Shown here: positions 11,625 through 61,559 of the stretch, in pieces | Numbering within the stretch: the stretch's first letter is position 1 | Layout: each line of letters begins with the position of its first letter | IMG/VR virus record: IMGVR_UViG_3300028394_002328 | Span: 62,001 to 126,000 of that record | DNA length: 64,000 nt | Direction: 5' to 3' (one strand) | The notes under the pieces: model-generated | What the model was told of the DNA's origin: nothing | The model's database searches: none | What the model saw: the letters and a program-made list of their open reading frames with translations, nothing else | Program-made: the position numbers and the translations under genes

Positions 11625-11649
11625 TTGATTCCTGTAGATAAATACGGGC

Positions 11650-12117
11650 ATGTGGATATTATCTGTTCTACCTGATTACGCTATACATGGTTTATTAACT
11701 GTTGGTATTATTGGTGTGATTCTAGGCTTTGTATTAGGGTTTATACCATTTGTTGGTAAGTATAAACTACCTATTCAAATTATCAGTATATTCGTACTAA
11801 CACTTGCCTTATACTTAGAAGGTGGGTTAGAAAATGAACACATATGGCAATCGAAAGTAAAAGAAGTAGAAGCTAAAGTTGCTGTATCAGAAGTCAAAGC
11901 TGTAGAAAAAACTGTAGAAATACAAGAAAAGATTGTAAACAAAACCAAGGTCATCAAACAAAAGGGCGATGATATAATAAAATATATTGATAAAGAAATC
12001 ATTAAAAAAGAAGAGATTATCAAATATATAGAAAATTGTCCAGTGCCTCAAGAAATCATTGAGCAACATAATAAGATTGTAAACTTATCTAGTCAATCCT
12101 CAGGAGAGAAAAAATGA
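11650..12117 (+). CDS. Putative inner-membrane spanin (Rz-like)
   Basis: N-terminal transmembrane segments followed by a long coiled-coil periplasmic region; immediately upstream of a lipoprotein. Confidence 0.65.
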   Translation: MWILSVLPDYAIHGLLTVGIIGVILGFVLGFIPFVGKYKLPIQIISIFVLTLALYLEGGLENEHIWQSKVKEVEAKVAVSEVKAVEKTVEIQEKIVNKTKVIKQKGDDIIKYIDKEIIKKEEIIKYIENCPVPQEIIEQHNKIVNLSSQSSGEKK

Positions 12118-12383
12118 GGACGTTAATACCAGTAATATTATTGTTATCTGCTTGTGCTACCGCCCCTGTTCCAATAGAGCGTAAATTTCCTCCTTATCCT
12201 AGCGCATTAGCAGAAAAATGCGAACCGTTAAAACCTATTGAGCCTGGTGATAAAGTACCTATTACAGACATGTTAAAAGTTGTAGTAGAAAACTATGTGA
12301 GATATTATAATTGTGCAACCAAAGTTGAGAGTTGGCAAGAATGGTATACTGAGCAGAAAAAAATATTTGAAAGCGTGAAATAA
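12114..12383 (+). CDS. Putative outer-membrane spanin lipoprotein (Rz1-like)
   Basis: Lipobox LLLSAC, Pro-rich segment PVPIERKFPPYP, further Cys residues. Confidence 0.7.
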   Translation: MRTLIPVILLLSACATAPVPIERKFPPYPSALAEKCEPLKPIEPGDKVPITDMLKVVVENYVRYYNCATKVESWQEWYTEQKKIFESVK

Positions 12384-12441
12384 TTCTCAGTTTACAAAAG
12401 CCTACTGTGTGATAAATACTATATAGATTTGGAACATAGAT

Positions 12442-12972
12442 ATGGCCACACTTGAAGTCATTAATGTAGGGGCAACAGCCAATGATGGTGACGGCGATCC
12501 CTTACGCACTGCCTTTCAAAAGGTAAACAATAACTTTGCGAATATTAATGCGGTAAACTTCTCTACATTACAAAGTATTACTGTTGGTGTAGATCCGCAA
12601 TTAATTCTAAGTACCCCTGCTAATGCTTTTACTCAAGCAACTATGCAGATTAATTCTAGTAATGTTCTCAATGATGATAGCCAAAATATTATAATATATT
12701 CGGCTATTAATAATAGTTTAACCGATGTTAATTGGGCAGAACAAAGTCAACAATATTTTGGAAATCTTATAACAGAATATGATATGGTTGTAGAAAATGG
12801 TAATGTTAACTTGTATGCACTACCATTAGGTAATTCAGCAAATACCACTATTGTACATTTTATCTCTTATCAGATAACATTCAATGCTATAGTCCCAGGA
12901 AGTATATTAACACTTACACAAGACACTGATTACGAGTTAGCAACTAACAATGGGTTAATAATTACAACATGA
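12442..12972 (+). CDS. Virion/baseplate-type structural protein
   Basis: N-terminus INVGATANDGDGDPLRTAFQKVNNNF resembles T4 gp9/gp10-type baseplate N-terminal motif; late motif GATAAATA upstream. Confidence 0.6.
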   Translation: MATLEVINVGATANDGDGDPLRTAFQKVNNNFANINAVNFSTLQSITVGVDPQLILSTPANAFTQATMQINSSNVLNDDSQNIIIYSAINNSLTDVNWAEQSQQYFGNLITEYDMVVENGNVNLYALPLGNSANTTIVHFISYQITFNAIVPGSILTLTQDTDYELATNNGLIITT

Positions 12973-13361
12973 GAGCTAGAGAATTTATTACAGAAGCAAC
13001 CGGATCTATTCAGCCTGCAGTAGAGCGAACATTACCTGCTGCATGGGTTATTGATAAATTAAAAAATAATGATTTTTATACTCAATATAGATTTGGTGTA
13101 GGGTTAGCAGGAGCAAAAGGTGCTAAACAGCGTCAAGAGGATGCTGTACCCGAGTTCGCTAAAGAAACTCCATGGGGAGAAAATTTAGTTATAGTATCAT
13201 ACGCAGGCATAGATCCATTGCAAGGATATCTAGATGATACAATGCATGAAATGGGAATGAAAACAAGTGATGCAAAACTAATTACAACACCTAAAAGTGA
13301 AGAGCCGGTAGATACTGGTACTAAGAGTACTTTAAAACCCTTTAAAGGGTATAAAAAATGA
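12969..13361 (+). CDS. Putative internal head protein, paralog A
   Basis: Starts MRAREFITE; shares C-terminal KSEEPxDTxTKS...FKGYKK with the next gene. Confidence 0.5.
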   Translation: MRAREFITEATGSIQPAVERTLPAAWVIDKLKNNDFYTQYRFGVGLAGAKGAKQRQEDAVPEFAKETPWGENLVIVSYAGIDPLQGYLDDTMHEMGMKTSDAKLITTPKSEEPVDTGTKSTLKPFKGYKK

Positions 13362-13729
13362 GAGCCCATGAATTTTTAACTGAAAGTGATGGTAAACCTA
13401 ACCACAACCATACTCAAGTATCTAAGGGCATATATAAAGTTCGTGATAAAGGTGGATATGATAGAACATATCATTTAAATCGTTTATGGATGGCTATGGC
13501 AATGGCTGATGGTAAGAGTCAAGATGCAGTAGAAATGGATAATGCTAGTTTTATTGAGAAGTATAATTCAGTTCATCCATATACTGAAGAAGAATACAAT
13601 ATGTTTATAGCAGCCACAAAGACTATACCTACAGAAGTACACGAAGTAATTCCTTATTCCAAGAGTGAAGAACCCGAAGATACTAATACCAAGAGTATTG
13701 CTGTAGGATTTAAAGGGTATAAAAAATAA
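13358..13729 (+). CDS. Putative internal head protein, paralog B
   Basis: Starts MRAHEFLTE; shares C-terminal motif with the previous gene. Confidence 0.5.
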   Translation: MRAHEFLTESDGKPNHNHTQVSKGIYKVRDKGGYDRTYHLNRLWMAMAMADGKSQDAVEMDNASFIEKYNSVHPYTEEEYNMFIAATKTIPTEVHEVIPYSKSEEPEDTNTKSIAVGFKGYKK

Positions 13730-13759
13730 TTTATCTTGCGTTTGCGAATAAATATATGT

Positions 13760-14383
13760 ATGGAGACGGTTGCATATGTATATAAGTGGATTCATCTACC
13801 TACTGGTAAATGGTATATAGGGTCCCGAACTAGAGCGGGAAGCCATCCTGAAGATGGCTATTACTGTTCAAGTAAAATAGTCAAACCATTAATACTATCA
13901 AATCCAAATGAATGGAAACGAGAAATACTAGCAACTGGTACACCTGCTGATATGTATGCGTTAGAAACTAAATTACTACAGGATTCAAATGCTAAACATG
14001 ATTCAGCAAGTTACAATCAACATAATAATGATCGCTCACCGATTCGTACCGGTATCCCCCACACACCGCAATCAATAGATAAAATGAGTGGCCCGCGCAA
14101 GCCTTATGGTCCGCAAACACCAAACCATATTGAAAAACGAGCAGTCAAAAAAAGAGGAATAGGTAGGCCTGATTTAGGCCTATTGAATAGGTCTAGAGTC
14201 GGAATCAATAATCCAAACTTTGGAAAAATACAGTCCGATGAATGGAAGCTAAAAAATAGTATAGCCAATTCAGGTAAACCCAAACCACAAATTAACTGTC
14301 CACATTGTGGAGTTACAGGTGGTACTGGGGTGATGTCTAGATGGCATTTTAATAACTGTAAACAAAAGAAAGACCAACCATGA
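13760..14383 (+). mobile_element. Free-standing GIY-YIG homing endonuclease gene
   Basis: AYVYKW...GKWYIGSR (GIY-YIG variant), NUMOD3-like segments and C-terminal CPHCG...WHFNNC. The start is likely ATG 13760. Confidence 0.75.
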
Positions 14384-15069: not shown

Positions 15070-15074
15070 ACGAT

Positions 15075-15104
15075 AAATACTCACTATGTAGTGAGTATTT
15101 TTTT
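15075..15104 (+). terminator. Probable terminator hairpin
   Basis: AAATACTCACT-ATGT-AGTGAGTATTT followed by TTTT. Confidence 0.6.
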
Positions 15105-15149
15105 AAGATAAATATTAGTTTGGGAAGACGCCCAAACTAAATAATAATT

Positions 15150-16697
15150 ATGAGTGGATCACCATCATTAGTTAAGACCCCCTATGTAAAAACTAAATTC
15201 GCAACACAAAAAGAATTAGATGATTTTGTTAAGTGTTGCGACCCAGTTACTGGTTATCTATACTTCATGGATAACTTTTTTATGATTCAACACCCTACTA
15301 AGGGCAGCATGGTATATCATCCATGGCCTTATCAAGAACGGTTAATTCATACATACCATAATTATCGTTTTAGTATTAGTTTGATGCCTCGTCAAAGTGG
15401 TAAATCTACTAGTGCTGCCGGCTATCTACTTTGGTACGCTATGTTCGTGCCCGATTCTACTATCCTTATAGCAGCACATAAGTATACAGGCGCACAAGAA
15501 ATCATGCAGCGTATTCGCTACGCATATGAAAATTGCCCTGACTATATTAAAGCAGGTGTTACTACTTATAACAAAGGCTCATTAGACTTTGAAAACGGTA
15601 GTCGTATAGTTTCAGCCACTACTACGGAAAATACAGGTCGTGGTATGTCTATCACACTACTATACCTAGATGAGTTTGCGTTCGTTCGACCTACTATTGC
15701 TGAACAGTTTTGGACTTCTATTACACCTACACTATCAACTGGTGGTAAAGCAATTATCACTAGCACTCCAAATAGTGACGAAGACCAGTTTGCTCTTATT
15801 TGGAAAGGTGCTAATAAAACAGAAGATTCATATGGCAATCAAACTGAATTAGGTGTAAACGGATTTAGAGCATATAGGGCACATTGGACTGAGCAACCTG
15901 GCAGGGATCAAAAATGGGCTGATGAAATGAAAGCCCAACTAGGAGAAGATAGATTCCGTCGTGAAATAGGCTGCGAATTTATTATCGCAGATGAAACTCT
16001 TATTAGTCCTAGTACATTAATTGATTTAGAAGGTATTGAGCCTATCACCCGTATGGGCCAAGTTCGTTGGTATAAAAAACCTGAGAAGGGTAATATTTAC
16101 GCAGTAGGATTAGATCCAAGTTTAGGAACAGGTGGAGATCCTGCTGCTATACAAATCTTTGAAGCCAACACTACCACCCAAATTGGTGAATGGAAACATA
16201 ATAAAACAGACATACCTAATCAGATTAAATTACTAGCACAAATAAACAAGTATATCGTAGAATGTACAGGGGAAACTGATAATCTATATTATAGTATAGA
16301 GAATAATTCTATTGGTGAAGCTTCTCTAATATCATTAGCAGAATATGGTGAAACTAATATACCAGGTATTTTTTTAAGTGAGTCAGGCAAAAAGCGTAGA
16401 GGATACAATACTACACAAAAGTCTAAAATCACTGCCTGTGCTAAATTTAAAACGCTATTAGAAAGCAAGAAAATGAAAATTTATAGCAAAAGTTTGATAT
16501 CAGAATTAAAGACTTTTGTTGCTAGTGGTGGTAGTTATGCGGCTAAGATAGGTGATACTGATGATTTGATTATGGCATCATTGCTAACAGTTAGAATGCT
16601 ACAATCTTTAAGTGATTACTATCATGACTTGGGAGAACAAATTCGTGACCATGATGAATACATTCAACCATTACCATTCTTCGCCGTCTTAAGTTAA
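15150..16697 (+). CDS. terL: Terminase large subunit (T4 gp17-like)
   Basis: PRQSGKST Walker A, TGRGMS, LYLDEFAF Walker B, ITSTPN coupling motif, nuclease GLDPS and DDLIMA. Confidence 0.95.
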   Translation: MSGSPSLVKTPYVKTKFATQKELDDFVKCCDPVTGYLYFMDNFFMIQHPTKGSMVYHPWPYQERLIHTYHNYRFSISLMPRQSGKSTSAAGYLLWYAMFVPDSTILIAAHKYTGAQEIMQRIRYAYENCPDYIKAGVTTYNKGSLDFENGSRIVSATTTENTGRGMSITLLYLDEFAFVRPTIAEQFWTSITPTLSTGGKAIITSTPNSDEDQFALIWKGANKTEDSYGNQTELGVNGFRAYRAHWTEQPGRDQKWADEMKAQLGEDRFRREIGCEFIIADETLISPSTLIDLEGIEPITRMGQVRWYKKPEKGNIYAVGLDPSLGTGGDPAAIQIFEANTTTQIGEWKHNKTDIPNQIKLLAQINKYIVECTGETDNLYYSIENNSIGEASLISLAEYGETNIPGIFLSESGKKRRGYNTTQKSKITACAKFKTLLESKKMKIYSKSLISELKTFVASGGSYAAKIGDTDDLIMASLLTVRMLQSLSDYYHDLGEQIRDHDEYIQPLPFFAVLS

Positions 16698-16715
16698 TAC
16701 AAAGATAAATACTAT

Positions 16716-18458
16716 ATGCCCATTAAAACAGACTCATTAAACCGCGATTTATACAAATTACTCAAGGTAAGGGGTTACGATCCTATACCAAAAGGCAGCG
16801 ATGGGGAAACAGTACCTGTTCCTGATGAAGCCGAAGTTTTTAAATTTACTTTCAAAAAAGATGGTAACCCTGTAGACACTGCTTGGGTAACTATTGACAG
16901 TAACCAAGACTTAAAAATATATTATGATGATGATATTACTGACTCTACTAACGAAGATTTAGAATCAGGATCGTTTGATGATAGTTGGACTGGGTTTTTA
17001 CAACAATTAAAGATGTGGAGTCAACGCCGTCAGTTAGGCTTTGACACCGAAAACAAAGACCATTTAGCAAGTGATATGGCACAGAGGGATCATATGAAAA
17101 AGAAAGAAAACATAGCAGAAGGGTATTATCCAATGGGTAAACAAGCCAGTTATAGTGACGCTATACCTAGTGTCAAAATAATATTACAACATAACCGTAA
17201 ACTTGAAGAAGGTGAACAGCGTTATCGTAATATTTCTAGAATTTTCGTTGAAAATGCTAATGGCGAACGCTTTTTACTTAACACTACTAAGCCAGGTCTT
17301 GCCCGAGTATATGCTAGACATATCGCAGAGGGTGGCACACCATATGATGACCGCGCTAGTCATATTCAATCATTGGTTGAAGAATATGAAAAAATGGCAG
17401 GATTTGTTCGTGCTACCCGCAATGGACAATTTAATGAAAGTACCCAACGCTTAGTACTAGAAGGTGCTAATCATTATCAATCATTAAAAGAAACACTAAG
17501 CCGCATGACAGGTCGTCGCGGATACAATATGTATTTTGAAAGTTGGACTCCTGCTCTAATGGAAGATGATAGTGAAGTATCAGGTATTAATGAATTATTC
17601 GTTCAGGAAACACTAGATCCTAGAATTGAAAACGCTATGCCAATTCTTAAAAAATTACACAAGAAACTTGGTGAGATTAAAGAAGTTTCTCAGTTAGAAG
17701 AGTGGGCAGATAGTTTAATAAATGAATATAAGCAGGGTGATGACAGTGGTTATATTCAGTTATTACAAAGCAAATTAAAAGCAGGCAAGCCATTAACTGC
17801 CCAAGAAAAAGAAAAACTTAAAGCATATCTATCTGCTAAACAGTTAGGTCTAAAAGAAGAAGGTGATAGTGGTCAAACAGCACTTAATCCAGTTGGTATT
17901 CCTGAAGATGAACTAGATGAAGGCAAGGGTGCTATAAGAAAGTTCTTAGCAGGTTTAGGAATCATAGGTGCTTTAGGCGCACATATCAGTAGTGAAGACG
18001 AAGCCATAATACAAAGAATGGCTGTGAAATATGACCAAGCGCAGACTCCACAAGAGAAAGCACAAATCAAGCATGACATTGAAAGAGTTACAAAAGGTAG
18101 TTTAGTTAAAGAAGAAGATATAGAAGAAAGCGGGCTACAGGCATATCTTGGTAATAAGAAATATGGCAAAGAAGGTATGGATGCTTTACGCAAAGCAGGT
18201 CGTGATGGTGCTAGTAAAGAAAAGATGGCATCAATTCGTTCTAAGTATGACAAACTAGATGAAGTTGAAATGGACGAAGGCTTAGATGCTAACCAAAAGC
18301 GTGTAGGACAATTAGGCCCAACCGAAAAGGTAGGACCTAAAGGCGCAGTTGGTAAACTAGTTGGTGCTAATGAAAACTTTATCAATACAGTTGACCAAGC
18401 AGTAACGACTGAAGGTGTAGAAGAATTGGCTGCACTAAAACGATTATTGGGTAAATAA
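16716..18458 (+). CDS. Large acidic late protein, probable head-associated/prohead core protein
   Basis: Late motif directly upstream; Glu-rich low-complexity C-terminal half; function inferred only. Confidence 0.45.
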   Translation: MPIKTDSLNRDLYKLLKVRGYDPIPKGSDGETVPVPDEAEVFKFTFKKDGNPVDTAWVTIDSNQDLKIYYDDDITDSTNEDLESGSFDDSWTGFLQQLKMWSQRRQLGFDTENKDHLASDMAQRDHMKKKENIAEGYYPMGKQASYSDAIPSVKIILQHNRKLEEGEQRYRNISRIFVENANGERFLLNTTKPGLARVYARHIAEGGTPYDDRASHIQSLVEEYEKMAGFVRATRNGQFNESTQRLVLEGANHYQSLKETLSRMTGRRGYNMYFESWTPALMEDDSEVSGINELFVQETLDPRIENAMPILKKLHKKLGEIKEVSQLEEWADSLINEYKQGDDSGYIQLLQSKLKAGKPLTAQEKEKLKAYLSAKQLGLKEEGDSGQTALNPVGIPEDELDEGKGAIRKFLAGLGIIGALGAHISSEDEAIIQRMAVKYDQAQTPQEKAQIKHDIERVTKGSLVKEEDIEESGLQAYLGNKKYGKEGMDALRKAGRDGASKEKMASIRSKYDKLDEVEMDEGLDANQKRVGQLGPTEKVGPKGAVGKLVGANENFINTVDQAVTTEGVEELAALKRLLGK

Positions 18459-18467
18459 CTTTCTAAA

Positions 18468-18491: not shown

Positions 18492-18503
18492 ACCATATCC
18501 GGC

Positions 18504-27651: not shown

Positions 27652-27696
27652 GCCTTTTAACTTGAATAATTTTTTGGATGGCTATATACTTGTAGG

Positions 27697-28713
27697 ATGA
27701 TAAAAGTAACTACCAAGGAAGAACTATTATATTTTATGCAATGCGGGATGATGCGGTTGAGTATGAACGACCTTAGGTTTGTTCATAACATGCATATGAT
27801 TTCTTGTATTAGAGATAAAGCATTGACTTCAAACCAAGTTAAGTTGTTTAATATATTGACAAAGAAATATAAAAAACAATTGGACAAACATAGAATATCT
27901 CAGGGAATGATTGAACATATGCGGTGGAACACTAAAATTGTTTCTAGTGATCCTGAATTTACTAACGCACATATTACTATAGAAAATAATCATATCTATT
28001 TTAGAGCGCCGTTTAATAAAAATTTCTTGATAGCATTACGAAAAGATAATTTAGTTAATACATTTATATGGAATAAAGAACTTAAAAGGTATGAATCACC
28101 TTTTAGTACCCATGCATTAAAGTTAATTGTAACTATTTCACAAGATATTTACAAGACTGTTACTCATTGCGAAGTGACCAAAAAATTGTTAAATACTGTT
28201 AATCAGTATGAGGCATTGTATTGGGATCCTACTCTTATTCCGTTTGATAATAGATATATTATTGCCGCATCTAACTCTTCTTTGGATGAAGCGATTAAAG
28301 ATGTTGAATTGTCTAAGGACATTAAATGTATTTCACAATTATCTGAATATGGAATAACAATTGATCCTAGCATCATCGCCAATATTGGTAAATTAAAATT
28401 TGCTAGTGAATATGAACCAACAATTGACTTTGTAGATTTTGATTTAGTAGGGCTGTGGTTAAAGGAATTAGAATGTGACACCGTATATTATTCAGGTACA
28501 GCAAGAAAAAACTTTATGTATATTACTGAAACTGTAGATAGGATACTGAATAACTTAAAAATTAAACTGAAATTGTATTCTAATAATTTAGATATACCAA
28601 AATCAAACTACAATGTACTATTAGTATTAACAAGTAATACACAGACAATATACAACCATCAATTTAATAAAATAATTAAAATGAAAAACTCAACTCCAAT
28701 CTCAATTAAATGA
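27697..28713 (+). CDS. Hypothetical protein upstream of UvsW
   Basis: 338-aa ORF; TTGAAT-17-TATACT promoter ends 6 nt before ATG. Confidence 0.65.
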   Translation: MIKVTTKEELLYFMQCGMMRLSMNDLRFVHNMHMISCIRDKALTSNQVKLFNILTKKYKKQLDKHRISQGMIEHMRWNTKIVSSDPEFTNAHITIENNHIYFRAPFNKNFLIALRKDNLVNTFIWNKELKRYESPFSTHALKLIVTISQDIYKTVTHCEVTKKLLNTVNQYEALYWDPTLIPFDNRYIIAASNSSLDEAIKDVELSKDIKCISQLSEYGITIDPSIIANIGKLKFASEYEPTIDFVDFDLVGLWLKELECDTVYYSGTARKNFMYITETVDRILNNLKIKLKLYSNNLDIPKSNYNVLLVLTSNTQTIYNHQFNKIIKMKNSTPISIK

Positions 28714-30167: not shown

Positions 30168-30179
30168 TATACTATTATC

Positions 30180-30680
30180 ATGAACATACTATTACTAGAC
30201 AACATCAAATATAATTTAGAAAATCTACCCGATGAAGTAGATGATTTCAGATTTGCTATCTTAGATAACAGTAATCCTAGCAATGTAGATTACCATTATA
30301 TACCTCTTATATTTTTAGAATCATTTAGTGCTCCTGCACTAGTTTTACAGATTGGTAATCATACAATTAAGATGCCTGTAGATTGGCAAATATTGATTGG
30401 AGAAAAGGATCACGGTGATTTAGAAACATTACCATTGACTAGTGTTAATGATAGGGGGTTTAGTGCGTTTGAATTTAATCCACTGAGTTCTTTTAGGCCA
30501 TCATTTCAACCAATTGAAATTGTAGATGTATACCATGATGTAACTTGGTATGCACCTAGATTAAAGAATGGACAGTTTCTTTGCGTACCTATTGAAGATG
30601 GTCATAAACCTAAATGTGTTTATTTTGTAAAAGAAGTTAGTAGGAATTGTGAAATAGTAGACTATAATCAATCATTCTAA
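30180..30680 (+). CDS. Hypothetical beta-rich protein, possibly an inactive Hint fold
   Basis: The hydrophobic pattern parallels intein blocks but catalytic residues are absent; see findings. Confidence 0.55.
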   Translation: MNILLLDNIKYNLENLPDEVDDFRFAILDNSNPSNVDYHYIPLIFLESFSAPALVLQIGNHTIKMPVDWQILIGEKDHGDLETLPLTSVNDRGFSAFEFNPLSSFRPSFQPIEIVDVYHDVTWYAPRLKNGQFLCVPIEDGHKPKCVYFVKEVSRNCEIVDYNQSF

Positions 30681-40903: not shown

Positions 40904-40932
40904 TTGTATTTTACTTCATATTATGCTATAAT
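40904..40932 (+). promoter_or_regulatory. sigma70-type promoter ending 6 nt before the primase ATG
   Basis: TTGTAT-17-TATAAT with extended TG. Confidence 0.7.
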
Positions 40933-40938
40933 CATAAT

Positions 40939-46232: not shown

Positions 46233-46262
46233 AAAAACCCGAGATTTATTCTCGGGTTTTTT
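46233..46262 (+). terminator. Rho-independent terminator
   Basis: AAAAACCCGAGA-TTTAT-TCTCGGGTTTTT. Confidence 0.8.
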
Positions 46263-46280
46263 ACCATTATAAATATGTGT

Positions 46281-46736
46281 ATGAGTTATAGAATTTCTTG
46301 TTACACAATGTTTGATATTACACATACTGGAGTATTAAACCGATCTAGACCTAATGAAGGTCAAGATTTGAATGAGTGGGTTCAAAAAAGAAATACTCAG
46401 TGCAATTTTGATACAGTATTACAAGTCATATCACTAAGGTCACAGCCTGAGATAATTAACATGCCTTCTAAGATAGAAATTAGGTTTGATAATTTTGAGA
46501 ATTTTGGGTTTTTATTTGAACAGATAGAAAACGAATTATATCCATGTTGGACATTTGACTTTGATGTACAGCACCCAAGTGTGTTTGATGATGGTGTAAC
46601 AGAATTGGGCGCATTATACGGAGATTGCGATGGTGTTCCTATGATATTATGCGGAACAGAATGGAACAAACTTCCATCTTTTTTAGACGCTTCTCCTGAA
46701 TTAAAAAACATATATTTTACAGTACATCATGGATGA
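46281..46736 (+). CDS. Hypothetical late protein
   Basis: TATAAATA 5 nt before ATG 46281. Confidence 0.65.
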   Translation: MSYRISCYTMFDITHTGVLNRSRPNEGQDLNEWVQKRNTQCNFDTVLQVISLRSQPEIINMPSKIEIRFDNFENFGFLFEQIENELYPCWTFDFDVQHPSVFDDGVTELGALYGDCDGVPMILCGTEWNKLPSFLDASPELKNIYFTVHHG

Positions 46737-51933: not shown

Positions 51934-51960
51934 GATAAATACTAGACAGGAAATAAGAAA

Positions 51961-52518
51961 ATGGCATCATACGCATATACCGCAAGTTCAGCAGTAGCAA
52001 CATCAGGAAATATCGCTACAGATAAAATAATGATATCAACTACTAGTAGCCCTATTCAATATACTACTAGTTTTCCAAATGTTGCATTAACTGGAACAGT
52101 AACCTGTGCTACTAACAGCAATACGGTTACAGGTTCAGGAACTGCATTTACTACTCAGTTAAATATTGGAGCTTGGATAGGTAATACTAGTGGCAATACT
52201 GTTGGTATTGTTAAAGCAATTGCTAATAATACAAGTTTAACATTAACCGCAAATGCAGCAGTAGCAATTAGCGGAGCAACAGCGAGATATAACCCATATG
52301 GAGTTGCCTATACTGTGGCTACTGCCAATAGTACAATAATTCCTGCTAATACCGTAGCGAATAGTATTATTGTAGGTCAAGGCAATATAGTATCATTTTT
52401 AGAAGTAAGCGGTGTAACATCTGCACCATTTACTATTACAGAATTAGGTGCTGCACATCCTAATACAGGCACTACTGGTGTTTTAGCGACACCATCTGCC
52501 GGTGGACCTAACAACTAA
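51961..52518 (+). CDS. Probable virion structural protein
   Basis: GATAAATA and AGGA upstream; Thr/Ala/Asn-rich beta composition. Confidence 0.55.
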   Translation: MASYAYTASSAVATSGNIATDKIMISTTSSPIQYTTSFPNVALTGTVTCATNSNTVTGSGTAFTTQLNIGAWIGNTSGNTVGIVKAIANNTSLTLTANAAVAISGATARYNPYGVAYTVATANSTIIPANTVANSIIVGQGNIVSFLEVSGVTSAPFTITELGAAHPNTGTTGVLATPSAGGPNN

Positions 52519-54329: not shown

Positions 54330-54356
54330 AAAAAGGGACTTTAAAGTCCCTTTTTT
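54328..54356. terminator. Bidirectional terminator between convergent genes
   Basis: AAAAAAAGGGACT-TTAA-AGTCCCTTTTTT. Confidence 0.85.
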
Positions 54357-54757
54357 ATTAGTGTGTTTAATTTTTTTTGTACTACATCAAAATTTACTGT
54401 ACTAAACAATCCAGGATGTAATGGTTTGGGGTATTGACCTTCACCTACCCAAGCATATCCGCAATGCTCTTCATTTAATACAGGAATAAATTCTTCTTCT
54501 ATAGCAGAAAAAAAGGTATGGTATGTAAAGTTATTATTTACAAATTTTTGAATAGGTACTAGTTTAGGATTGTCGGGCCAATAACCAACCTCTTCTACAC
54601 TTTCTCGCTCTAACCCGTCTAATAGAGTTTCATCACTTTCTATTTTACCACCGGGAATACCCCAATTACCTGGATTCTTAGCGTCAGTTCTAAGTAAATA
54701 CAGGAATCGTCCAGTGTTTTTACTGTAAAAGAATATTCCAGCCGATATGTTATTCAT
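54341..54757 (-). CDS. Nudix hydrolase
   Basis: Nudix box GGKIESDETLLDGLERESVEEVG. Confidence 0.9.
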   Translation of the reverse strand: MNNISAGIFFYSKNTGRFLYLLRTDAKNPGNWGIPGGKIESDETLLDGLERESVEEVGYWPDNPKLVPIQKFVNNNFTYHTFFSAIEEEFIPVLNEEHCGYAWVGEGQYPKPLHPGLFSTVNFDVVQKKLNTLIKKGL

Positions 54758-54781
54758 CTACAAATTGTATCATATTATTAA

Positions 54782-56149
54782 TTAGATTACAATACTGTAG
54801 TCACCCTCATTATACCATCCATCAACTGCTTTTACCCAATTGCCATCTGTCCAACGATATTGCATGTTGGTAGTTAAATTAGTAACATATTCAATAGAAG
54901 TTGTATTTTCAGAATCAAACGCAACTTGCCATACTCCTAAGCTACTATTAAATTGTATTATATCATTAGCATTGGCTTTTAGATTTCCCCAAGCTACAGT
55001 AGAAGAATCGCCCCCTACACTCTCTACAATTAAATATCTTCTACCATTAATAGGTCCTGGCAAGCCTGCATTAGGACCAGTTAATTGTGGATTAATTATA
55101 CTGGCTACAGGATTTAAAGTATTTTGTGGCAGTGTATCAGGGTCTATGTTGTATAATAAAAATCTATCATCAAGTGGATCAGGAACTATTGTTCCTACAA
55201 TTTCTGTATCCATATATGGGTTTTGTAACCATATTTGTGATATACCTGGTTTTATAACTCCATAGGCATTTAAATAAGAAGTCCAATATAATGAAGTATT
55301 TGGAGCTTCAGGAATAGCAAACTCATCATTAGGTGGATCAAATGGTTGATTAGAAGGTAATAATTGTAATGTATTACCTAATAATAATACTTGGTATCCA
55401 TATGGACTAATTTTTTGTCTAGTGCCTAATAGTAAATCATCATCTTGTATATCTTGTAAGGTACTTCCTCTAAAAATACTATAGATAATTTTTTCAATAA
55501 CACCCATTTTCTTAAGCTTACTAGTTGTGCTTAACCATATGGGCATGTAGAATTTCCAAGTCATAACATCAATAGGGTTTCCTGTTCCTTGTGGAATACT
55601 ACGGCTAGTAAATGTTAATCCATCTTGATATACTATGCTTAAAGAAGTCCAATCTAAAAAGTTATCTGTACTTTGAATTTCTAATCCAGGATTGAACAAT
55701 GTTCCTAATTGTTCAATAATTTCTAATTTTTGATTATAATTTGTAGTCCAAAAATCAACAGTAACTCTTAGCGTATAAGGTACTGGCATTAATCTTTCCA
55801 CAGTAAATGCTTGACCCTGTGTAGTTTCATATGTTTGTGAATCAGCATTATATGCTCGTTGACGAATTTGTGTTTTTTCAACGAATGTAGGATTTTGAGT
55901 TCTATTTTGATTATATTCTAATCCACTTATGTAATAGGTTATCAATGGAGCTGATGGTAAATTACTAGCCGAGTTGTTAGCAATTATAGTAGAAGCCTGT
56001 CTGCTACTATCGCCATACATAATAGGTACTCTAACATATATTGTATTACCAGCAGGATCTTTTCCTTTAGTCACATACCAATTGGAAAATATTTTTGCAA
56101 ATTGAATTAAAAATCTGCGAATCTGATTATCATAAAAAAACTGTGCCAA
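54782..56149 (-). CDS. Tail completion/terminator protein (T4 gp15-like) with C-terminal extension
   Basis: FFYDNQIRRFLIQFAKIFS...VPIMYG...PVPY.L...FWT; TTG start. Confidence 0.7.
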   Translation of the reverse strand: MAQFFYDNQIRRFLIQFAKIFSNWYVTKGKDPAGNTIYVRVPIMYGDSSRQASTIIANNSASNLPSAPLITYYISGLEYNQNRTQNPTFVEKTQIRQRAYNADSQTYETTQGQAFTVERLMPVPYTLRVTVDFWTTNYNQKLEIIEQLGTLFNPGLEIQSTDNFLDWTSLSIVYQDGLTFTSRSIPQGTGNPIDVMTWKFYMPIWLSTTSKLKKMGVIEKIIYSIFRGSTLQDIQDDDLLLGTRQKISPYGYQVLLLGNTLQLLPSNQPFDPPNDEFAIPEAPNTSLYWTSYLNAYGVIKPGISQIWLQNPYMDTEIVGTIVPDPLDDRFLLYNIDPDTLPQNTLNPVASIINPQLTGPNAGLPGPINGRRYLIVESVGGDSSTVAWGNLKANANDIIQFNSSLGVWQVAFDSENTTSIEYVTNLTTNMQYRWTDGNWVKAVDGWYNEGDYSIVI

Positions 56150-56164
56150 TTGAATTACCTTTGT

Positions 56165-57856
56165 TTATGGAATTGGTGGGATAGGATCTAACGGAGGTTG
56201 CAATATTGAAGATAATGGTTGTGCTTCAGCGATAGTAGTACCATTTGTCAATACAGTTACATTAGAGTCATTGATAAATCCGGACAATAATGACTTATCT
56301 GAAGCAGTAAATCCTGTATCTGTTCTAACATTTTCGGAAATTCTTATCCATAATTTACCATCCCATCTATACAATAATTGTGGTAAATAATCTATTCGTA
56401 AGAAATAATCACCTACTTGTGGGTTTTGCGGGAATGATATACCAGTACCAACTGGATATCCATTTGGTGCTGCTGCTGTACCTGTTAAATAGCCTGCACT
56501 ATATCCGAATGTTCTAGGACTTGATCTAGCAATATATTGGAATGCAGGATCGCAATCAGCACGGTAATTCATTTGTGGTGTTACCGTACCAGTGAAACCG
56601 GGTGCTACTGGGTTTTGATCACCTGTTGCATATGTATTATCAGAAGTTCCATATGGACCAGTAACTGGGCCATTAGACTCTAATGAAAGAATATAATCAC
56701 CTTCAACTTGTCCTGAATCATTACCTATTCTTTTTGGTGCTAATTGAAGTACCTCTAAATTAATTTGAGTAGAAACATTTATAGCATCTACTGTTATGTC
56801 CCATATACTTTGTAATGCTTTTTTAGATATTTTAACTACAGGACTTGCAATTTTGTAATTAGGATTACGAATCATTGCTACTGTACCTGTAGTAGGTTCT
56901 CCACTTGAGCTAGTAATTAAGTTAATAGGTGGTGAAGGTTGATCATTCTTTCCTGATAATACACCATTTGATTCATATTCACCATATGTTGGGGCAATAT
57001 ATAAACTACTACGATTGTATCCTGATTGCGGAACGATTCTAGCGGCTTCTTGTAATGCAGCATTATTAATGTCAAGATTCTTGTTATATGTAGCAAGTAT
57101 ATCTTTAAGATTCTGTTCTGTAGATAACTGCCAATATGCTGGATTTGGTGGATATACACCAGCAGGAACATCTGTAATTGATTCGTAATTCTTGTCGCCA
57201 TAAGTGATTATATAACCAGGTGGATAAGTTTTATCTTTATCCCATAAACCTAAATAATTATCCTGATCAATAGGCTCTTGTAGTATTTGACTGAATTCTT
57301 GACTATCAACCATTGGCTCGCATTTAATGCGCCATAGATGGGGATACCATGTTACAGAGAATCCTTCACTAGCATAATTAGAATCAGTTATTTGATAGAA
57401 TCTTTTTAATGCTACTGGTATTGTTTCTTTTAATGGGTTGTAATCAAGTAAATGCGGCAATTCTAATACATCACCTACCATTAACTTTCTACCTATAAGT
57501 TCAATCATGTCATTATAATGTACTGTAATAAAGATAATGTCATTATTCAAAAACAATCCAAATTGACTTAAATCAAAGTCTAAGTTTTGTACATTGTAAT
57601 GTCCACGCAACCGATATATACTAGTATCGTATGTTCTATCACGGTTTTCTAAAAACAACAGGTCTTGTATATTAGTGGGATTTAGTGTAGAATACTCAGG
57701 TTGAGTATAATCAACGCTTGCACCTTGATTAGTAGGACCTAAATATTTATGTATGTATAAATCAGTTCCACCAACAGTTAACATTTCCGATATGGATCTA
57801 TCTAAAAATCTATAGTCGTTTTGTTTATTGGAACGGTAGAGGCTAAGTCTTGGCAT
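56165..57856 (-). CDS. Neck/head-completion protein (T4 gp14-like) with extensions
   Basis: MPRLSLY...DLLFLENRDR.Y...FDLSQFGLFL..D; true start is ATG 57856, 5 nt after ATAAATA. Confidence 0.6.
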   Translation of the reverse strand: MPRLSLYRSNKQNDYRFLDRSISEMLTVGGTDLYIHKYLGPTNQGASVDYTQPEYSTLNPTNIQDLLFLENRDRTYDTSIYRLRGHYNVQNLDFDLSQFGLFLNNDIIFITVHYNDMIELIGRKLMVGDVLELPHLLDYNPLKETIPVALKRFYQITDSNYASEGFSVTWYPHLWRIKCEPMVDSQEFSQILQEPIDQDNYLGLWDKDKTYPPGYIITYGDKNYESITDVPAGVYPPNPAYWQLSTEQNLKDILATYNKNLDINNAALQEAARIVPQSGYNRSSLYIAPTYGEYESNGVLSGKNDQPSPPINLITSSSGEPTTGTVAMIRNPNYKIASPVVKISKKALQSIWDITVDAINVSTQINLEVLQLAPKRIGNDSGQVEGDYILSLESNGPVTGPYGTSDNTYATGDQNPVAPGFTGTVTPQMNYRADCDPAFQYIARSSPRTFGYSAGYLTGTAAAPNGYPVGTGISFPQNPQVGDYFLRIDYLPQLLYRWDGKLWIRISENVRTDTGFTASDKSLLSGFINDSNVTVLTNGTTIAEAQPLSSILQPPLDPIPPIP

Positions 57857-57880
57857 ATATGTATTTATCATGCACGAGGC

Positions 57881-57909
57881 TTGACAATAAATGGCAGATC
57901 GTGTATCAT
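57881..57909 (+). promoter_or_regulatory. sigma70-type promoter, back-to-back with a minus-strand late promoter (57862-57868)
   Basis: TTGACA-17-TATCAT. Confidence 0.8.
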
Positions 57910-57938
57910 TGATATATAGATCGTAAACAGGAGTGATC

Positions 57939-59138: not shown

Positions 59139-59150
59139 TAAGGATAAAAA

Positions 59151-59585: not shown

Positions 59586-59619
59586 TCCTGATAAATAACA
59601 TATATCAGGATTACAAAAA

Positions 59620-60405
59620 ATGACCGCAAATATATTATCCACACCTACTAATCTAAACTTAGATGAATTAAAAGAATCATTATTCACTAACCTAAGATTA
59701 CGATTAGGTGATGGTATTATAGATATTGAACTAGATCCTCAGCATTATGAGGCTGCATTCAATTATACCATTAAACTATATCGTCAGCGGGCACAAAATG
59801 CTACCGCTGAATCGTATACATTAATGACGGTTATTCAAAACATAGACACTTACACCTTACCTCAAGAATTTATTAATGTAAGGGCACTATTTCGTAGAAC
59901 AGTAGGACTTGAAACAGGTACTGGTTCTACATCTTTTGATCCTTTCTCAAGTGCTATTCTTAACACTTACTTGTTAAATTATAACTATACCGGTGGCATG
60001 GCAACATATGATTTTTATGCCGGTTATGTTGAATTGGCAGCAAGAATGTTTGGTGGTTATGTCAATTATACTTTTGATCCAGTTACTAAAGTTCTTAGAG
60101 TAGTTAGAGATTTTAAGGGAACTGGAGAACGCATATTAGTTTGGGCTGATGTGCAAAGACCTGTTGAAGTTCTATTGCAAGATCCAGGTGCTGGAGTTTG
60201 GATTGGTGACTATGTTCTAGCAGTTCTAAAAGGTATCATTGGAGAAGCCCGCGAAAAATTTGGTACTATTGCTGGTCCAGGTGGCGGCACTACTTTAAAT
60301 GGTACTGCGATGAAAGCTGAATCCAAAGCGTTGCAAGAAGCACTATTGGACGATCTGAGAAAATATCAAGACTATTCTCAGCCATTGACTTGGATTCAAG
60401 GTTAA
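59620..60405 (+). CDS. Neck protein (T4 gp13-like)
   Basis: LRLRLGDGIIDIELD...AIKLYRQR...GEAREKF...GGTTLNG..MKAE; late motif upstream. Confidence 0.7.
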   Translation: MTANILSTPTNLNLDELKESLFTNLRLRLGDGIIDIELDPQHYEAAFNYTIKLYRQRAQNATAESYTLMTVIQNIDTYTLPQEFINVRALFRRTVGLETGTGSTSFDPFSSAILNTYLLNYNYTGGMATYDFYAGYVELAARMFGGYVNYTFDPVTKVLRVVRDFKGTGERILVWADVQRPVEVLLQDPGAGVWIGDYVLAVLKGIIGEAREKFGTIAGPGGGTTLNGTAMKAESKALQEALLDDLRKYQDYSQPLTWIQG

Positions 60406-60466
60406 CCTAAATACTTTATTTTGTAAAGCTCCTGTAATATAATATATATTTACAGGAGCTTACCAT

Positions 60467-61102
60467 ATGATCATTGGAATTACCGGGTTGATAAATTCTG
60501 GCAAGGACACCATAGCAGATTATCTGACTACATTTCATGGCTATAAAAGATTAAGCTTTGCCGCTTCTCTAAAAGATGCTGTAGCAGCGGTATTTAACTG
60601 GGATCGTGAAATGCTAGAGGGCACTACCAAGTCTAGCAGAGAATGGCGTGAACAAGTTGATCAATGGTGGGCAGAACGATTAGGCATGCCTCATCTTACT
60701 CCACGATGGATTCTACAGTATTGGGGAACAGAAGTTTGCCGTAACGCATTTCATAGTGACATTTGGGTAGCATCAGTAGAAAACAAATTAAGAACTTCTG
60801 CTGATAATATTGTATTAACAGATTGTAGATTCTACAATGAGGTAGGGGCTATTAAAAATGCAGGTGGAATTACTATTAGAGTTGAAAGAGGTGCTAACCC
60901 TGAATGGTATTCACATGCAATAAACTTTAATAAAGGTGAAAACGGTAATTTAGGCTGGGCTCTTGGGAGAAATCATCTTGAACAATTAGGTATTCATGCT
61001 AGTGAATATAGTAGCGTTGGATTAGAGTATGACTATATCATTGCTAATGATGGGACAATAGATGACCTACATAAAAAAATTCAATCAATAGTCAACTTGT
61101 AA
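60467..61102 (+). CDS. Deoxynucleoside monophosphate kinase (T4 gp1-like)
   Basis: IIGITGLINSGKDT, SFAASLK, TPRWILQYWGTE, TDCRFYNE, HASE. Confidence 0.9.
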   Translation: MIIGITGLINSGKDTIADYLTTFHGYKRLSFAASLKDAVAAVFNWDREMLEGTTKSSREWREQVDQWWAERLGMPHLTPRWILQYWGTEVCRNAFHSDIWVASVENKLRTSADNIVLTDCRFYNEVGAIKNAGGITIRVERGANPEWYSHAINFNKGENGNLGWALGRNHLEQLGIHASEYSSVGLEYDYIIANDGTIDDLHKKIQSIVNL

Positions 61103-61438
61103 GTCACCGCGTTTCCAAGTAACTTCTTTTTTCTTTACTACTTCAACACAATTCAAACATATGCTACGCAAATTACTTAATACAATATTTTCTAAATTAC
61201 CGTCAATATGAAATACGGTAATTTGCGTTGGAAATACACTACGAAACCCACATAAATCACATGTGGGTTTTTTCTTGTATCCTGATTTTTCCCAATTATA
61301 AATTCTAGGTTTTTTCTTAGCCCTAGTCTTACCACACCCATCGCAAATACTACGGTAGTGAGTTATGTCATTCCTTTTGTAATTAATAGCACAATAATTC
61401 TTGTTGCAAGTATTACAGATAGGCCTTTTTATTGTCAT
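61085..61438 (-). CDS. HNH-like Zn-binding protein
   Basis: CNTC, CDGC, CDLCGF, HIDGN..N...NL..ICLNC; TATAAATA 4 nt before ATG. Confidence 0.7.
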   Translation of the reverse strand: MTIKRPICNTCNKNYCAINYKRNDITHYRSICDGCGKTRAKKKPRIYNWEKSGYKKKPTCDLCGFRSVFPTQITVFHIDGNLENIVLSNLRSICLNCVEVVKKKEVTWKRGDLQVDY

Positions 61439-61559
61439 GTTGTATTTATATCTTCACCTTCGAAGGTTCGCTTAAATGGCTGTTTTTGAAAAAATAAAAT
61501 AAATAAGAATATGCAAACTAGGTGGTAAACCTCATAATTTTACAATAAGGAAAAATAAA

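What the first reader, a model, noticed from the sequence alone, without database searches (positions are those of the whole stretch)
11638..61449. Widespread leaderless mRNAs from both late and sigma70 promoters
Seen: ATAAATA lies only 4-5 nt before the ATG, with no Shine-Dalgarno, for six genes: 11650, 13760, 16716, 46281, 57856 (minus) and 61438 (minus, perfect TATAAATA). A sigma70 -10 box ends exactly 6 nt before the ATG for four more: 27697, 30180, primase 40939 and Nudix 54757 (minus); three of these have an extended TG. Established: T4 late promoters are TATAAATA with the start a few bases downstream, and sigma70 starts about 6-7 nt after -10. Leaderless mRNAs initiate on 70S ribosomes with little dependence on anti-SD pairing. 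Inference: the phage routes selected replication and morphogenesis genes through leaderless initiation, perhaps robust to host translation shut-off. Early accessory genes, by contrast, use strong GGAG leaders.
Basis: partly seen in the sequence, partly recalled or inferred. Interest (0 to 1): 0.6.

Follow-up and report, generated by a model that had tools for sequence, protein, structure and literature searches.

The report
Promoters fused to start codons
In this uncultured 335 kb freshwater jumbo phage and its close relatives, dozens of genes have a promoter placed so that transcription should begin at the A of the ATG, implying mRNAs with no ribosome-binding leader; no RNA 5' end has yet been mapped.

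Summary
All ten sites are as described. Genome-wide, 22 of 110 ATAAATA motifs lie 4-5 nt before an ORF-opening ATG. None lies 9-15 nt away, and a second cluster sits 16-26 nt away, many with a GGAG/AGGA-type SD-like stretch. Permuted motifs give 0-8. Strong sigma70-like promoters peak exactly 6 nt before an ATG.

Orthologues in IMG/VR contigs keep the geometry while the spacer sequence drifts. For the primase, 43 of 44 distinct upstream sequences have TAnnnT ending 6 nt before the start. Some relatives have a leader plus SD at the same gene.

Five large uncultured relatives share the enrichment. T4 and five cultured relatives (PA5oct, Atu_ph07, Serratia BF, SCTP-2, XaC1) do not. The late class is mostly morphogenesis genes and the sigma70 class is mostly replication genes.

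Best reading: promoter-start codon fusions giving leaderless mRNAs for about 12-14% of genes, a clade-specific trait. No TSS was mapped, because the only RNA run was too sparse. The idea of robustness to host shut-off is untested. This is a new variant of a known kind: leaderless phage mRNAs are known from lambda cI and Thermus phages.

The parts
11638..11652 (+). ATAAATA (11638-11644), 5-nt spacer, then the ATG of a 155-aa gene (11650-12117; weak PHROG match labelled 'signal peptide motif')
13748..13762 (+). ATAAATA (13748-13754), 5-nt spacer, then the ATG of a homing-endonuclease-like gene (13760-14383). The frame is also open upstream to a TTG at 13736, so this start is the least certain.
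15108..15152 (+). Large terminase gene (15150-16697) with two motifs: ATAAATA at 15108-15114 (35-nt leader with an inverted repeat, no SD) and CTAAATA at 15137-15143, 6 nt before the ATG
16705..16718 (+). ATAAATA (16705-16711), 4-nt spacer, then the ATG of a 580-aa virion structural protein (16716-18458)
   Evidence: In the orthologues the motif is nearly always present with a 4-8 nt spacer of variable sequence; five relatives have a ~24-nt leader with AGGA instead.
27662..27699 (+). TTGAAT (-35), 17 nt, TATACT (-10, 27685-27690), 6 nt, then the ATG of a 338-aa gene of unknown function (27697-28713)
   Evidence: 8 of 11 distinct orthologue upstreams keep the -10 box exactly 6 nt from the start.
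30145..30182 (+). TTGAAA (-35), 17 nt, TG-extended TATACT (30168-30173), 6 nt, then the ATG of a 166-aa phrog_11279 protein (30180-30680). The extended TG is also the TG of the upstream gene's TGA stop.
   Evidence: 55 of 64 distinct upstreams keep the 6-nt spacing, with 35 different discriminators.
40904..40941 (+). TTGTAT (-35), 17 nt, TG-extended TATAAT (40927-40932), 6 nt, then the ATG of the DNA primase gene (40939-41910)
   Evidence: 43 of 44 distinct upstreams keep the geometry; with the A of ATG as +1 the elements sit at -35..-33, -15/-14 and -12..-7.
46238..46283 (+). Intrinsic terminator hairpin plus T-run (about 46238-46262), TATAAATA (46268-46275), 5-nt spacer, then the ATG of a 151-aa gene (46281-46736)
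   Evidence: hairpin -17.7 kcal/mol, z = -6.4
54755..54792 (-). TTGTAA (-35, 54787-54792), 17 nt, TG-extended TACAAT (54764-54769), 6 nt, then the ATG (54757) of the Nudix hydrolase gene (54341-54757)
   Evidence: Only 6 of 29 distinct orthologue upstreams keep 6 nt; the relatives listed at about 82-84% identity have TATAAT plus 10 nt.
57854..57868 (-). ATAAATA (57862-57868), 5-nt spacer, then the ATG (57856) of a 563-aa virion structural protein (56165-57856, phrog_11591)
   Evidence: Orthologues: 39 of 49 at 4-5 nt, 9 at 17-20 nt, none between. PA5oct, Serratia BF and XaC1 have ATAAATA (Atu_ph07 has TAAATA) followed by a 22-34 nt leader with a GGAG-type SD.
61436..61450 (-). TATAAATA (61443-61450), 4-nt spacer, then the ATG (61438) of a 117-aa gene (61085-61438). 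It lies in a 121-nt divergent intergenic region.
61499..61562 (+). Contrast case: ATAAATA (61499-61505) with a 54-nt leader carrying AAGGA before the ATG at 61560 (1183-aa gene)
51935..51963 (+). Contrast case: ATAAATA with a 19-nt leader (AGGAAA) before the ATG at 51961. Similar leadered late-type sites lie at 12412, 43311, 45753, 47218, 49308 and 59591.

Best explanation
These are promoter-start codon fusions. In this phage lineage two kinds of promoter are repeatedly placed so that RNA polymerase should start at, or within one to three bases of, the A of the ATG. The resulting mRNA has no 5' leader and no Shine-Dalgarno site, and would be translated by recognition of its 5'-terminal AUG.

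One kind is the T4-type late promoter (A/C)TAAATA, read by host RNA polymerase carrying a phage gp55-like sigma. The other is an ordinary host sigma70 promoter with a -35, a 17-nt spacer and an extended -10.

Late-type fusions serve mainly morphogenesis genes: portal, baseplate wedge, tail fibres, virion proteins and probably the large terminase. Sigma70-type fusions serve replication-type genes: primase, a DNA polymerase piece, Nudix and a homing endonuclease. Roughly 38-47 of about 330 genes are affected, and about 40% of the putative late promoters.

The trait is shared by a clade of 250-364 kb uncultured freshwater phages. Individual genes switch between the fused state and a short leader with an SD.

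Shown here: the motifs, their geometry, their statistics and their conservation. Inferred: the start sites and the mode of translation.
For: 1. Geometry matches the canon. T4 late motifs span -13 to -6 (PMC2988020), so a 5-nt spacer puts the A of ATG at +1. For the sigma70 type, with the A as +1, the conserved columns fall at -35..-33, -15/-14 and -12..-7.
2. Statistics. This genome has 28 ATAAATA-N4-5-ATG matches against 4 for the reversed control.
3. Bimodal distances with an empty 9-15 nt zone, both genome-wide and within one orthologous gene family (39 at 4-5 nt, 9 at 17-20 nt).
4. Spacing is conserved while the spacer sequence is not: primase 43/44 with 24 discriminators; the 30180 gene 55/64 with 35 discriminators; the 27697 gene 8/11; the 16716 gene.
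5. ATAAATA behaves as a promoter rather than a ribosome-binding site. ATAAATA (TAAATA in Atu_ph07) stands 20-34 nt upstream with an SD-like stretch in between at orthologous genes of some relatives and of cultured cousins. It is 13-fold enriched upstream of genes. It was already proposed as the late promoter of Rak2-like phages (PMC5259590).
6. A gp55-like sigma is present in the four uncultured relatives searched, three of them complete (E about 1e-45).
7. No SD at these starts (mean pairing -0.34 kcal/mol against -1.71 at random positions); only ATG at 4-5 nt (22 ATG, 0 GTG/TTG, against 15% non-ATG among SD-led genes); the first 40 nt are less structured (-1.8 against -3.5 kcal/mol, p = 4e-5).
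8. Contexts that exclude read-through. Three divergent intergenic regions of 44, 60 and 46 nt each hold two opposed motifs 4-7 nt from their ATGs. A strong terminator ends about 5 nt before the TATAAATA at 46268.
9. The start codons are right. Orthologues align from residue 1. PHROG profiles match from position 1-3. No downstream in-frame start with a good SD exists for the eight sites where this was checked; 57856 and 61438 were not checked this way.
10. The gene classes fit the promoter classes.
Against: No 5' end has been mapped. The only RNA data were a few 150-nt contigs from one lake metatranscriptome. One of them (16682-16833) runs across the motif and the ATG, so RNA read through from upstream, or DNA carried in the library, also exists.

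The gp55-like sigma was not found in this record. Its absence is explained by an assembly break, but that is an inference.

Spacers of 6-8 nt, and 10 nt in most Nudix orthologues, imply 1-4 nt leaders rather than strictly leaderless mRNAs.

The cultured relatives infect Proteobacteria, where leaderless translation is usually held to be inefficient (my own knowledge). The host here is unknown.

Many of the fused genes sit inside co-directional gene arrays and could also be translated from polycistronic RNA.
Confidence: 0.75

Rival explanations
1. The promoters are real, but the proteins are made mainly from longer transcripts that start upstream and read through. Internal initiation would be SD-independent, through AU-rich unstructured RNA, protein S1 or re-initiation after the upstream stop. 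The fused promoter would chiefly feed downstream genes, and its own first ORF would be poorly translated from that RNA.
For: One metatranscriptome contig spans 16682-16833, across the motif and the ATG. Many fused genes follow a co-directional gene by only 15-25 nt, for example the tail-fibre array and 16716 after the terminase. SD use is modest genome-wide, 43% of first starts at -4 kcal/mol or better, so SD-independent initiation must exist anyway.
Against: It does not explain why the spacing is fixed at 4-5 or 6 nt, why 9-15 nt never occurs, why only ATG is used, or why the 5' coding ends are weakly structured. It is impossible for the 44-60 nt divergent pairs and unlikely behind the terminator at 46238-46262.
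Confidence: 0.13
2. AUAAAUA acts at the RNA level as a ribosome-binding or enhancer element that replaces the SD at about -12 to -6. It would not be a promoter at these sites.
For: The motif occupies the position an SD would take. It is AU-rich, as S1-dependent enhancers are (my own knowledge).
Against: The same motif stands 17-54 nt upstream, often with an SD-like stretch in between, at other genes and at orthologues of the same genes. It occurs back-to-back on both strands in divergent regions. It matches the T4-family late promoter, and the clade has the matching sigma. This rival also cannot explain the sigma70-type cases, whose -35, TG and -10 elements are all conserved at promoter spacing.
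Confidence: 0.06
3. Chance co-occurrence in an AT-rich genome, or wrongly chosen start codons whose true starts have SD sites.
For: The genome is 63% A+T. One site (13760) has an alternative upstream TTG in frame.
Against: Permutation and reversed-pattern controls, conservation across hundreds of related contigs, N-terminal alignment from residue 1, and no SD-led alternative starts.
Confidence: 0.02

Closest known systems
Thermus phages phiYS40 and Lalka27a (leaderless transcription strategy)
   Same: [quoted passage not shown] In Lalka27a this includes a distinct late promoter class thought to depend on a phage factor (bioRxiv 10.64898/2026.04.20.719267, which cites earlier work on phiYS40).
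   Different: There most transcripts are leaderless and the host phylum (Deinococcus-Thermus) itself uses this mode widely (PMC12340547). Here only about 12-14% of genes are affected, the rest use leaders (many with SD), the late motif is the T4-type ATAAATA, and the host is unknown but shows canonical sigma70 and SD signals. Those cases are mapped experimentally; this one is not.
-10 region adjacent to ORFs in Deinococcus-Thermus, and leaderless genes generally
   Same: A -10 element at a fixed short distance from the start codon, with no SD, is the accepted sequence signature of leaderless genes and has been validated with reporters (PMC12340547).
   Different: That is a cellular, phylum-wide habit. 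Here it is a phage-lineage trait that also uses a phage-specific late promoter.
T4 late promoters (TATAAATA, gp55/gp33/gp45)
   Same: Same core motif at the -10 position, with no conserved -35 apparent in the orthologue listings, preceding morphogenesis genes. A gp55-like sigma is present in the clade.
   Different: T4 itself shows no motif-ATG fusion: 2 matches against 2 in the control. gp33 and clamp dependence were not examined here.
ATAAATA late promoters predicted in Rak2-like jumbo phages (CBB, GAP32) and relatives such as PA5oct
   Same: Same family of phages by shared structural proteins. The same motif stands upstream of structural genes (PMC5259590).
   Different: In the five cultured relatives tested the motif is not enriched 4-5 nt from ATGs: 9, 6, 4, 14 and 0 matches against controls of 6, 6, 4, 16 and 5. 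Their orthologous gene carries a 22-34 nt leader with an SD-like stretch.
Lambda cI mRNA from PRM
   Same: The classic phage leaderless mRNA from a sigma70 promoter, with the start at the A of AUG (my own knowledge; cited in PMC12340547).
   Different: That is a single regulatory gene in a temperate phage, not a class of dozens of lytic-cycle genes.

Membership tests
Leaderless genes (promoter -10 element abutting the start codon) | -10-type element at a fixed 5-7 nt from the start codon | tested here: met
   sharp peaks at 4-5 nt (late type) and 6 nt (sigma70 type), conserved in orthologues.
Leaderless genes (promoter -10 element abutting the start codon) | No Shine-Dalgarno sequence upstream of the start | tested here: met
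   mean anti-SD pairing -0.34 kcal/mol; 3 of 47 reach -4.5 kcal/mol or better. Random positions average -1.71.
Leaderless genes (promoter -10 element abutting the start codon) | AUG (rarely GUG) as the 5'-terminal codon | tested here: met
   22 ATG and no GTG/TTG at 4-5 nt. ATG in 155 of 157 distinct orthologue sequences, GTG in two primase orthologues.
Leaderless genes (promoter -10 element abutting the start codon) | Primary transcript 5' end at the start codon | tested here: inconclusive
   one lake metatranscriptome, held as contigs at depth 2-7, cannot show 5' ends.
Leaderless genes (promoter -10 element abutting the start codon) | Translation initiates on the 5'-terminal AUG | not testable with these tools
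   Needs toeprinting, ribosome profiling or reporters.
T4-type late promoters | (T)ATAAATA core at the -10 position, with no conserved -35 | tested here: met
   the motif is present in nearly all orthologues. By eye, upstream sequence varies apart from the coding end of the previous gene; no per-column statistic was computed for the late-type sites.
T4-type late promoters | Phage-encoded gp55-like sigma | tested here: inconclusive
   Not found in this record. Found in G001, G002, G003 and G005. In the three complete relatives (G001-G003) it lies between the portal and a wedge-like gene, exactly where this contig is broken, with about 8 kb missing.
T4-type late promoters | Co-activator gp33 and sliding-clamp dependence | not tested
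   Not searched. The CBB paper reports no gp33 or gp45 homologue in that relative.
T4-type late promoters | Precede late (morphogenesis) genes | tested here: met
   portal, baseplate wedge, tail fibres, virion proteins, terminase.
Sigma70 extended -10 promoters | TTGACA-like -35, 17 +/- 1 nt spacer, TGn, TATAAT-like -10 | tested here: met
phiYS40-type strategy (most phage transcripts leaderless) | The majority of transcription units are leaderless | tested here: not met
   About 38-47 of about 330 genes. 34 ATAAATA sites have 16-26 nt leaders.

The most novel reading that the evidence does not exclude
Late in infection this phage clade deliberately shifts the cell towards SD-independent, 5'-AUG-dependent initiation. 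Its leaderless morphogenesis mRNAs would then out-compete host and early messages. The shift could come from remodelling ribosomes: the phage encodes ribosomal protein bS21, which sits beside the anti-SD, behind its own ATAAATA promoter. It could also come from another late function. The repeated switching of orthologous genes between fused and leadered states would then be a tuning knob for expression timing or level.
Probability: 0.1. Interest if true: 0.85.

Novelty: new variant of a known kind. Interest (0 to 1): 0.6.

Why it matters
Leaderless mRNAs are usually treated as a habit of particular cellular phyla or as isolated phage curiosities such as lambda cI. Here a T4-type late promoter, which depends on a phage sigma, appears to have been fused to the start codons of highly expressed structural genes across a whole clade of about 350 kb freshwater phages. 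T4 and the cultured cousins do not do this.

If the start sites are confirmed, three things follow.
- Leaderless initiation can carry bulk virion production in a phage whose other genes use leaders, many with SD sequences.
- The clade offers dozens of natural matched pairs: the same gene fused in one phage and leadered in another. These could be used to measure what each initiation mode costs and buys.
- Gene callers that rely on SD models will misplace starts in such genomes.

It also raises a testable question about the unknown host's translation apparatus and about the phage-encoded bS21.

Tried and rejected
- Megablast of two window segments against cultured phage genomes found nothing. 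The record is an uncultured IMG/VR contig.
- T4 gp55 gave a weak hit (E = 0.006) to a 384-aa frame at 291-292 kb. I rejected it as a sigma candidate because PHROGs and Pfam find nothing in that protein.
- PHROG gp55 families, Pfam Sigma70_r2 and a home-made profile of the gp55-like proteins of four cultured relatives all found nothing in this record. tblastx of the relatives' sigma neighbourhood against this genome also found nothing. Together with the gene order, this points to an assembly break rather than true absence.
- RNA evidence: one metatranscriptome holds about 20% of the sampled words, and only short low-depth contigs could be laid. It gives no information on 5' ends.
- Host inference from a TctC-like phage gene failed, with only a 22%-identical hit in a Clostridia MAG.
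- Bacteroidetes-type TAnnTTTG promoters are not enriched upstream of genes. The Bacteroidetes bS21-phage clade of PMC9723584 differs in GC content and in bS21 gene context. I therefore did not adopt a Bacteroidetes host.
- No tRNA genes in the window.
- No S1, IF3 or MazF/PemK homologues in six genomes of the clade.
- The simple terminator scan missed the hairpin at 46238-46262, which direct folding shows clearly.
- I did not use the large protein searches, structure prediction or complex prediction.

Full report
**What the window is.** The window is bases 62001-126000 of a single 335,035-bp contig with 37% G+C. It is an uncultured IMG/VR virus record, linear, and CheckV rates it about 95% complete. 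No cultured phage matches it at the DNA level. A virion structural protein (phrog_11591) ties it to the jumbo-phage group that includes PA5oct, the Rak2-like phages (Serratia BF and others), Atu_ph07, SCTP-2 and Xanthomonas XaC1. Near-identical sequence occurs in a lake-water metatranscriptome, and hundreds of related contigs exist in IMG/VR.

**Checking the observation.** Two details differ. Both 46281 and 61438 have a perfect TATAAATA. All four sigma70-type sites also have a TTGnnn -35 at exactly 17 nt.

I then asked whether the pattern exceeds chance, using the whole genome.
- ATAAATA occurs 110 times on both strands. That makes it the rarest of its 21 letter permutations, which occur 126-275 times.
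- Even so, 22 copies have an ATG opening an ORF of at least 50 codons at 4-5 nt. The permutations give 0-8, and the 8 are the same sites read one base shifted.
- The full histogram has 30 sites at 4-8 nt, none at 9-15 nt and 34 at 16-26 nt. Many of the second group have a GGAG/AGGA-type stretch between motif and ATG.
- I scored complete sigma70-type promoters on -35, spacing, -10 and extended TG. The 156 best sites include 6 with an ORF-opening ATG exactly 6 nt after the -10 box, 1 at 5 nt and none at 3, 4 or 7 nt. A separate broad cluster lies at 25-36 nt.

Allowing A, C or T at the first motif position gives 39 late-type fused genes, and there are 8 sigma70-type ones. My crude gene caller finds about 314-330 genes in total.

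**What the motifs are.**
- ATAAATA is 13-fold enriched in the 100 nt upstream of genes.
- At the orthologue of the 57856 gene, PA5oct, Serratia BF and XaC1 carry ATAAATA, and Atu_ph07 carries TAAATA. In all four it lies 22-34 nt upstream with a GGAG-type SD in between.
- The CBB paper had already proposed ATAAATA as the T4-like late promoter of Rak2-like phages, and reported a gp55-like sigma (PMC5259590).
- T4 late promoters span -13 to -6 (PMC2988020). A 5-nt spacer therefore puts the A of the ATG at +1, and a 4-nt spacer puts it at -1.
- For the sigma70 type I aligned 44 distinct sequences upstream of primase orthologues on the start codon. The conserved columns fall at -35 to -33 (TTG), -15/-14 (TG) and -12 to -7 (TAnAnT), which are the textbook coordinates if the A of the ATG is +1.

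**The sigma factor.** I could not find a gp55-like gene in this record by any route. The PA5oct gp55-like protein does find clear homologues (E about 1e-45, 304-309 aa) in the four uncultured relatives searched, three of which are complete. In the three complete genomes the gene lies between the portal gene and a baseplate-wedge-like gene. In this record those two genes sit 4.5 kb from the right end and 4.8 kb from the left end. About 8 kb is missing between them compared with the relatives. I infer that the sigma gene lies in the assembly break.

**Comparative evidence.** This is the strongest part of the case.
- 16716 gene: the motif is present in nearly all of about 30 distinct upstream sequences from relatives at 47-100% protein identity. 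The 4-8 nt spacer varies freely. Five relatives instead have a ~24-nt leader with AGGA.
- 57856 gene: 49 distinct sequences give 39 at 4-5 nt, 9 at 17-20 nt and none in between, all starting with ATG.
- Primase: 43 of 44 have TAnnnT ending exactly 6 nt before the start, 43 have the extended TG and 39 have the -35 TTG. There are 24 different discriminators, and two relatives use GTG.
- 30180 gene: 55 of 64 keep the 6-nt spacing with 35 discriminators. Some relatives have unrelated upstream sequence that still rebuilds TTGACA-17-TATAAT-6-ATG.
- 27697 gene: 8 of 11 keep it.
- Nudix gene: this is the exception. Only the closest relatives keep 6 nt, and the relatives listed at about 82-84% identity have TATAAT plus 10 nt, which implies a leader of about 4 nt with no SD.
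- Portal gene: fused in this phage, but it has a 20-24 nt leader behind CTAAATA in three complete relatives.

Genes therefore switch between the two states. Intermediate spacings are avoided, as expected if a leader must be either absent or long enough to hold a ribosome-binding site.

**How far the trait extends.** The pattern ATAAATA-N4-5-ATG, compared with its reversed control, gives 28 against 4 in this genome. In five large uncultured relatives it gives 29/8, 23/3, 25/7, 14/7 and 15/4. In PA5oct, Atu_ph07, Serratia BF, SCTP-2 and XaC1 it gives only 9/6, 6/6, 4/4, 14/16 and 0/5, and in T4 2/2. The trait belongs to this freshwater clade and not to T4-type late promoters in general.

**Supporting features.**
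- The fused starts have no SD. Mean pairing is -0.34 kcal/mol, against -1.71 at random positions.
- All 22 starts at 4-5 nt are ATG, whereas 15% of my SD-led set use GTG or TTG.
- The first 40 nt of the fused genes fold more weakly than those of SD-led genes: -1.8 against -3.5 kcal/mol, p = 4e-5.
- Three divergent intergenic regions of 44, 60 and 46 nt each hold two opposed motifs 4-7 nt from their ATGs. That leaves no room for leaders and no co-directional upstream gene to read through from.
- A strong intrinsic terminator (-17.7 kcal/mol, z = -6.4) ends about 5 nt before the TATAAATA that precedes 46281.
- Orthologues align from residue 1, and PHROG profiles match from position 1-3, so the start codons are right.

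**Which genes are affected.** The late-type fusions precede the following:
- the portal, baseplate-wedge-like proteins, four tail-fibre paralogues and four virion structural proteins;
- the large terminase, through a CTAAATA variant;
- a few non-structural genes: an epimerase, a radical-SAM protein, a phosphoesterase and a homing endonuclease;
- several genes of unknown function.

The sigma70-type fusions precede primase, a DNA-polymerase-related protein, Nudix, phrog_11279, a GIY-YIG endonuclease and unknowns.

**What is not shown.** No start site was observed. The single RNA run gave a handful of 150-nt contigs at depth 2-7. One spans 16682-16833, so read-through RNA or contaminating DNA exists there too. 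The host is unknown. The genome shows sigma70-type and SD signals and no Bacteroidetes-type promoters, and one attempt at host inference failed.

**Comparison with what is known.**
- Leaderless phage mRNAs are known from lambda cI and, at scale, from Thermus phages phiYS40 and Lalka27a, where most transcripts are leaderless.
- The rule that a -10 box adjacent to an ORF marks a leaderless gene has been validated in Deinococcus-Thermus (PMC12340547).
- phiKZ has no leaderless transcripts, and AR9 has leaders of 26-491 nt.
- The PA5oct and CBB papers do not mention leaderless transcripts, and no paper in the library holds both 'TATAAATA' and 'leaderless'.

I therefore class this as a new variant of a known kind. 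The mechanism is familiar. Its coupling to the T4-type late promoter, its scale in a jumbo phage, its restriction to one clade and the repeated switching at orthologous genes are new as far as I can tell.

**Verdict.** The leaderless reading is well supported in silico (confidence about 0.75) but unproven, and the proposed purpose remains open. Interest is 0.6.

Noticed in passing
G000:C1:244718-244983 (outside the window): The phage encodes ribosomal protein bS21 (Pfam PF01165, 59 bits, above the family cut-off; a 73-aa ORF starting at 244762). It follows an ATAAATA at 244718 with a 37-nt leader and no obvious SD, so it is probably a late gene. bS21 is also present in relatives G001 and G002 but not in G003-G005, which show the same promoter-ATG enrichment. 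bS21 is therefore not required for the trait.
   Followed up: partly
Ends of the contig (G000:C1:1-4835 and 330511-335035): In three complete relatives the gene order is portal, gp55-like sigma, wedge-like gene. In this record the contig is broken between the portal and the wedge-like gene, with about 8 kb missing. The late sigma gene is probably lost to the assembly break, and the record is circularly permuted relative to G001.
   Followed up: yes
window 15108-15152: The large terminase gene has two late-type motifs. ATAAATA lies 35 nt upstream, followed by an inverted repeat (tttggg...cccaaa) and no SD. CTAAATA lies 6 nt from the ATG. This may be a dual start arrangement.
   Followed up: no
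window 13748-14383, and G000:C1:269905-270246 (-): Two homing-endonuclease-like genes carry their own promoter-ATG fusions. One follows ATAAATA. The other follows a perfect TTGACA-17-TGcTATAAT-6-ATG, the best sigma70 consensus in the genome. Mobile genes may travel with a minimal leaderless expression signal.
   Followed up: no
Whole genome: ATAAATA is the rarest of its 21 permutations (110 copies against 126-275), and only a minority of copies lie inside same-strand coding sequence. This looks like selection against spurious late promoters.
   Followed up: partly
G000:C1:168066-175031 and 199124-202575: An array of tail-fibre paralogues (859, 736, 714 and 474 aa, sharing phrog_2295). At least two are preceded by the previous gene's conserved C-terminal '...tggtaa', a few bases and then ATAAATA-N5-ATG. 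The fused promoter seems to have been duplicated along with the gene.
   Followed up: no
L137 and L141 (IMG/VR primase orthologues): Two relatives have GTG instead of ATG at the position 6 nt after the -10 box. These would be GUG-initiated leaderless mRNAs, which are poorly translated in E. coli but are used in some leaderless-rich bacteria.
   Followed up: no
L393-L460 (Nudix orthologues): Most Nudix orthologues have TGcTATAAT followed by 10 nt before the ATG, implying a leader of about 4 nt with no SD. This intermediate state is otherwise avoided.
   Followed up: partly
window 1-2706 (the ORF starts about 4.2 kb before the window): A very large ORF of about 2,298 codons runs into the window. 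It was not examined.
   Followed up: no
G000:C1:290403-291314 (-) (L002:255-1166): A TctC-family (tripartite tricarboxylate transporter receptor, PF03401) protein is encoded by the phage. Its only bacterial match in the genome collection was 22% identical, so it gave no host clue.
   Followed up: partly
G004 (IMG/VR relative, 267 kb): IMG/VR classes this relative as a provirus. If that is right, its flanks could name the host. Not examined.
   Followed up: no
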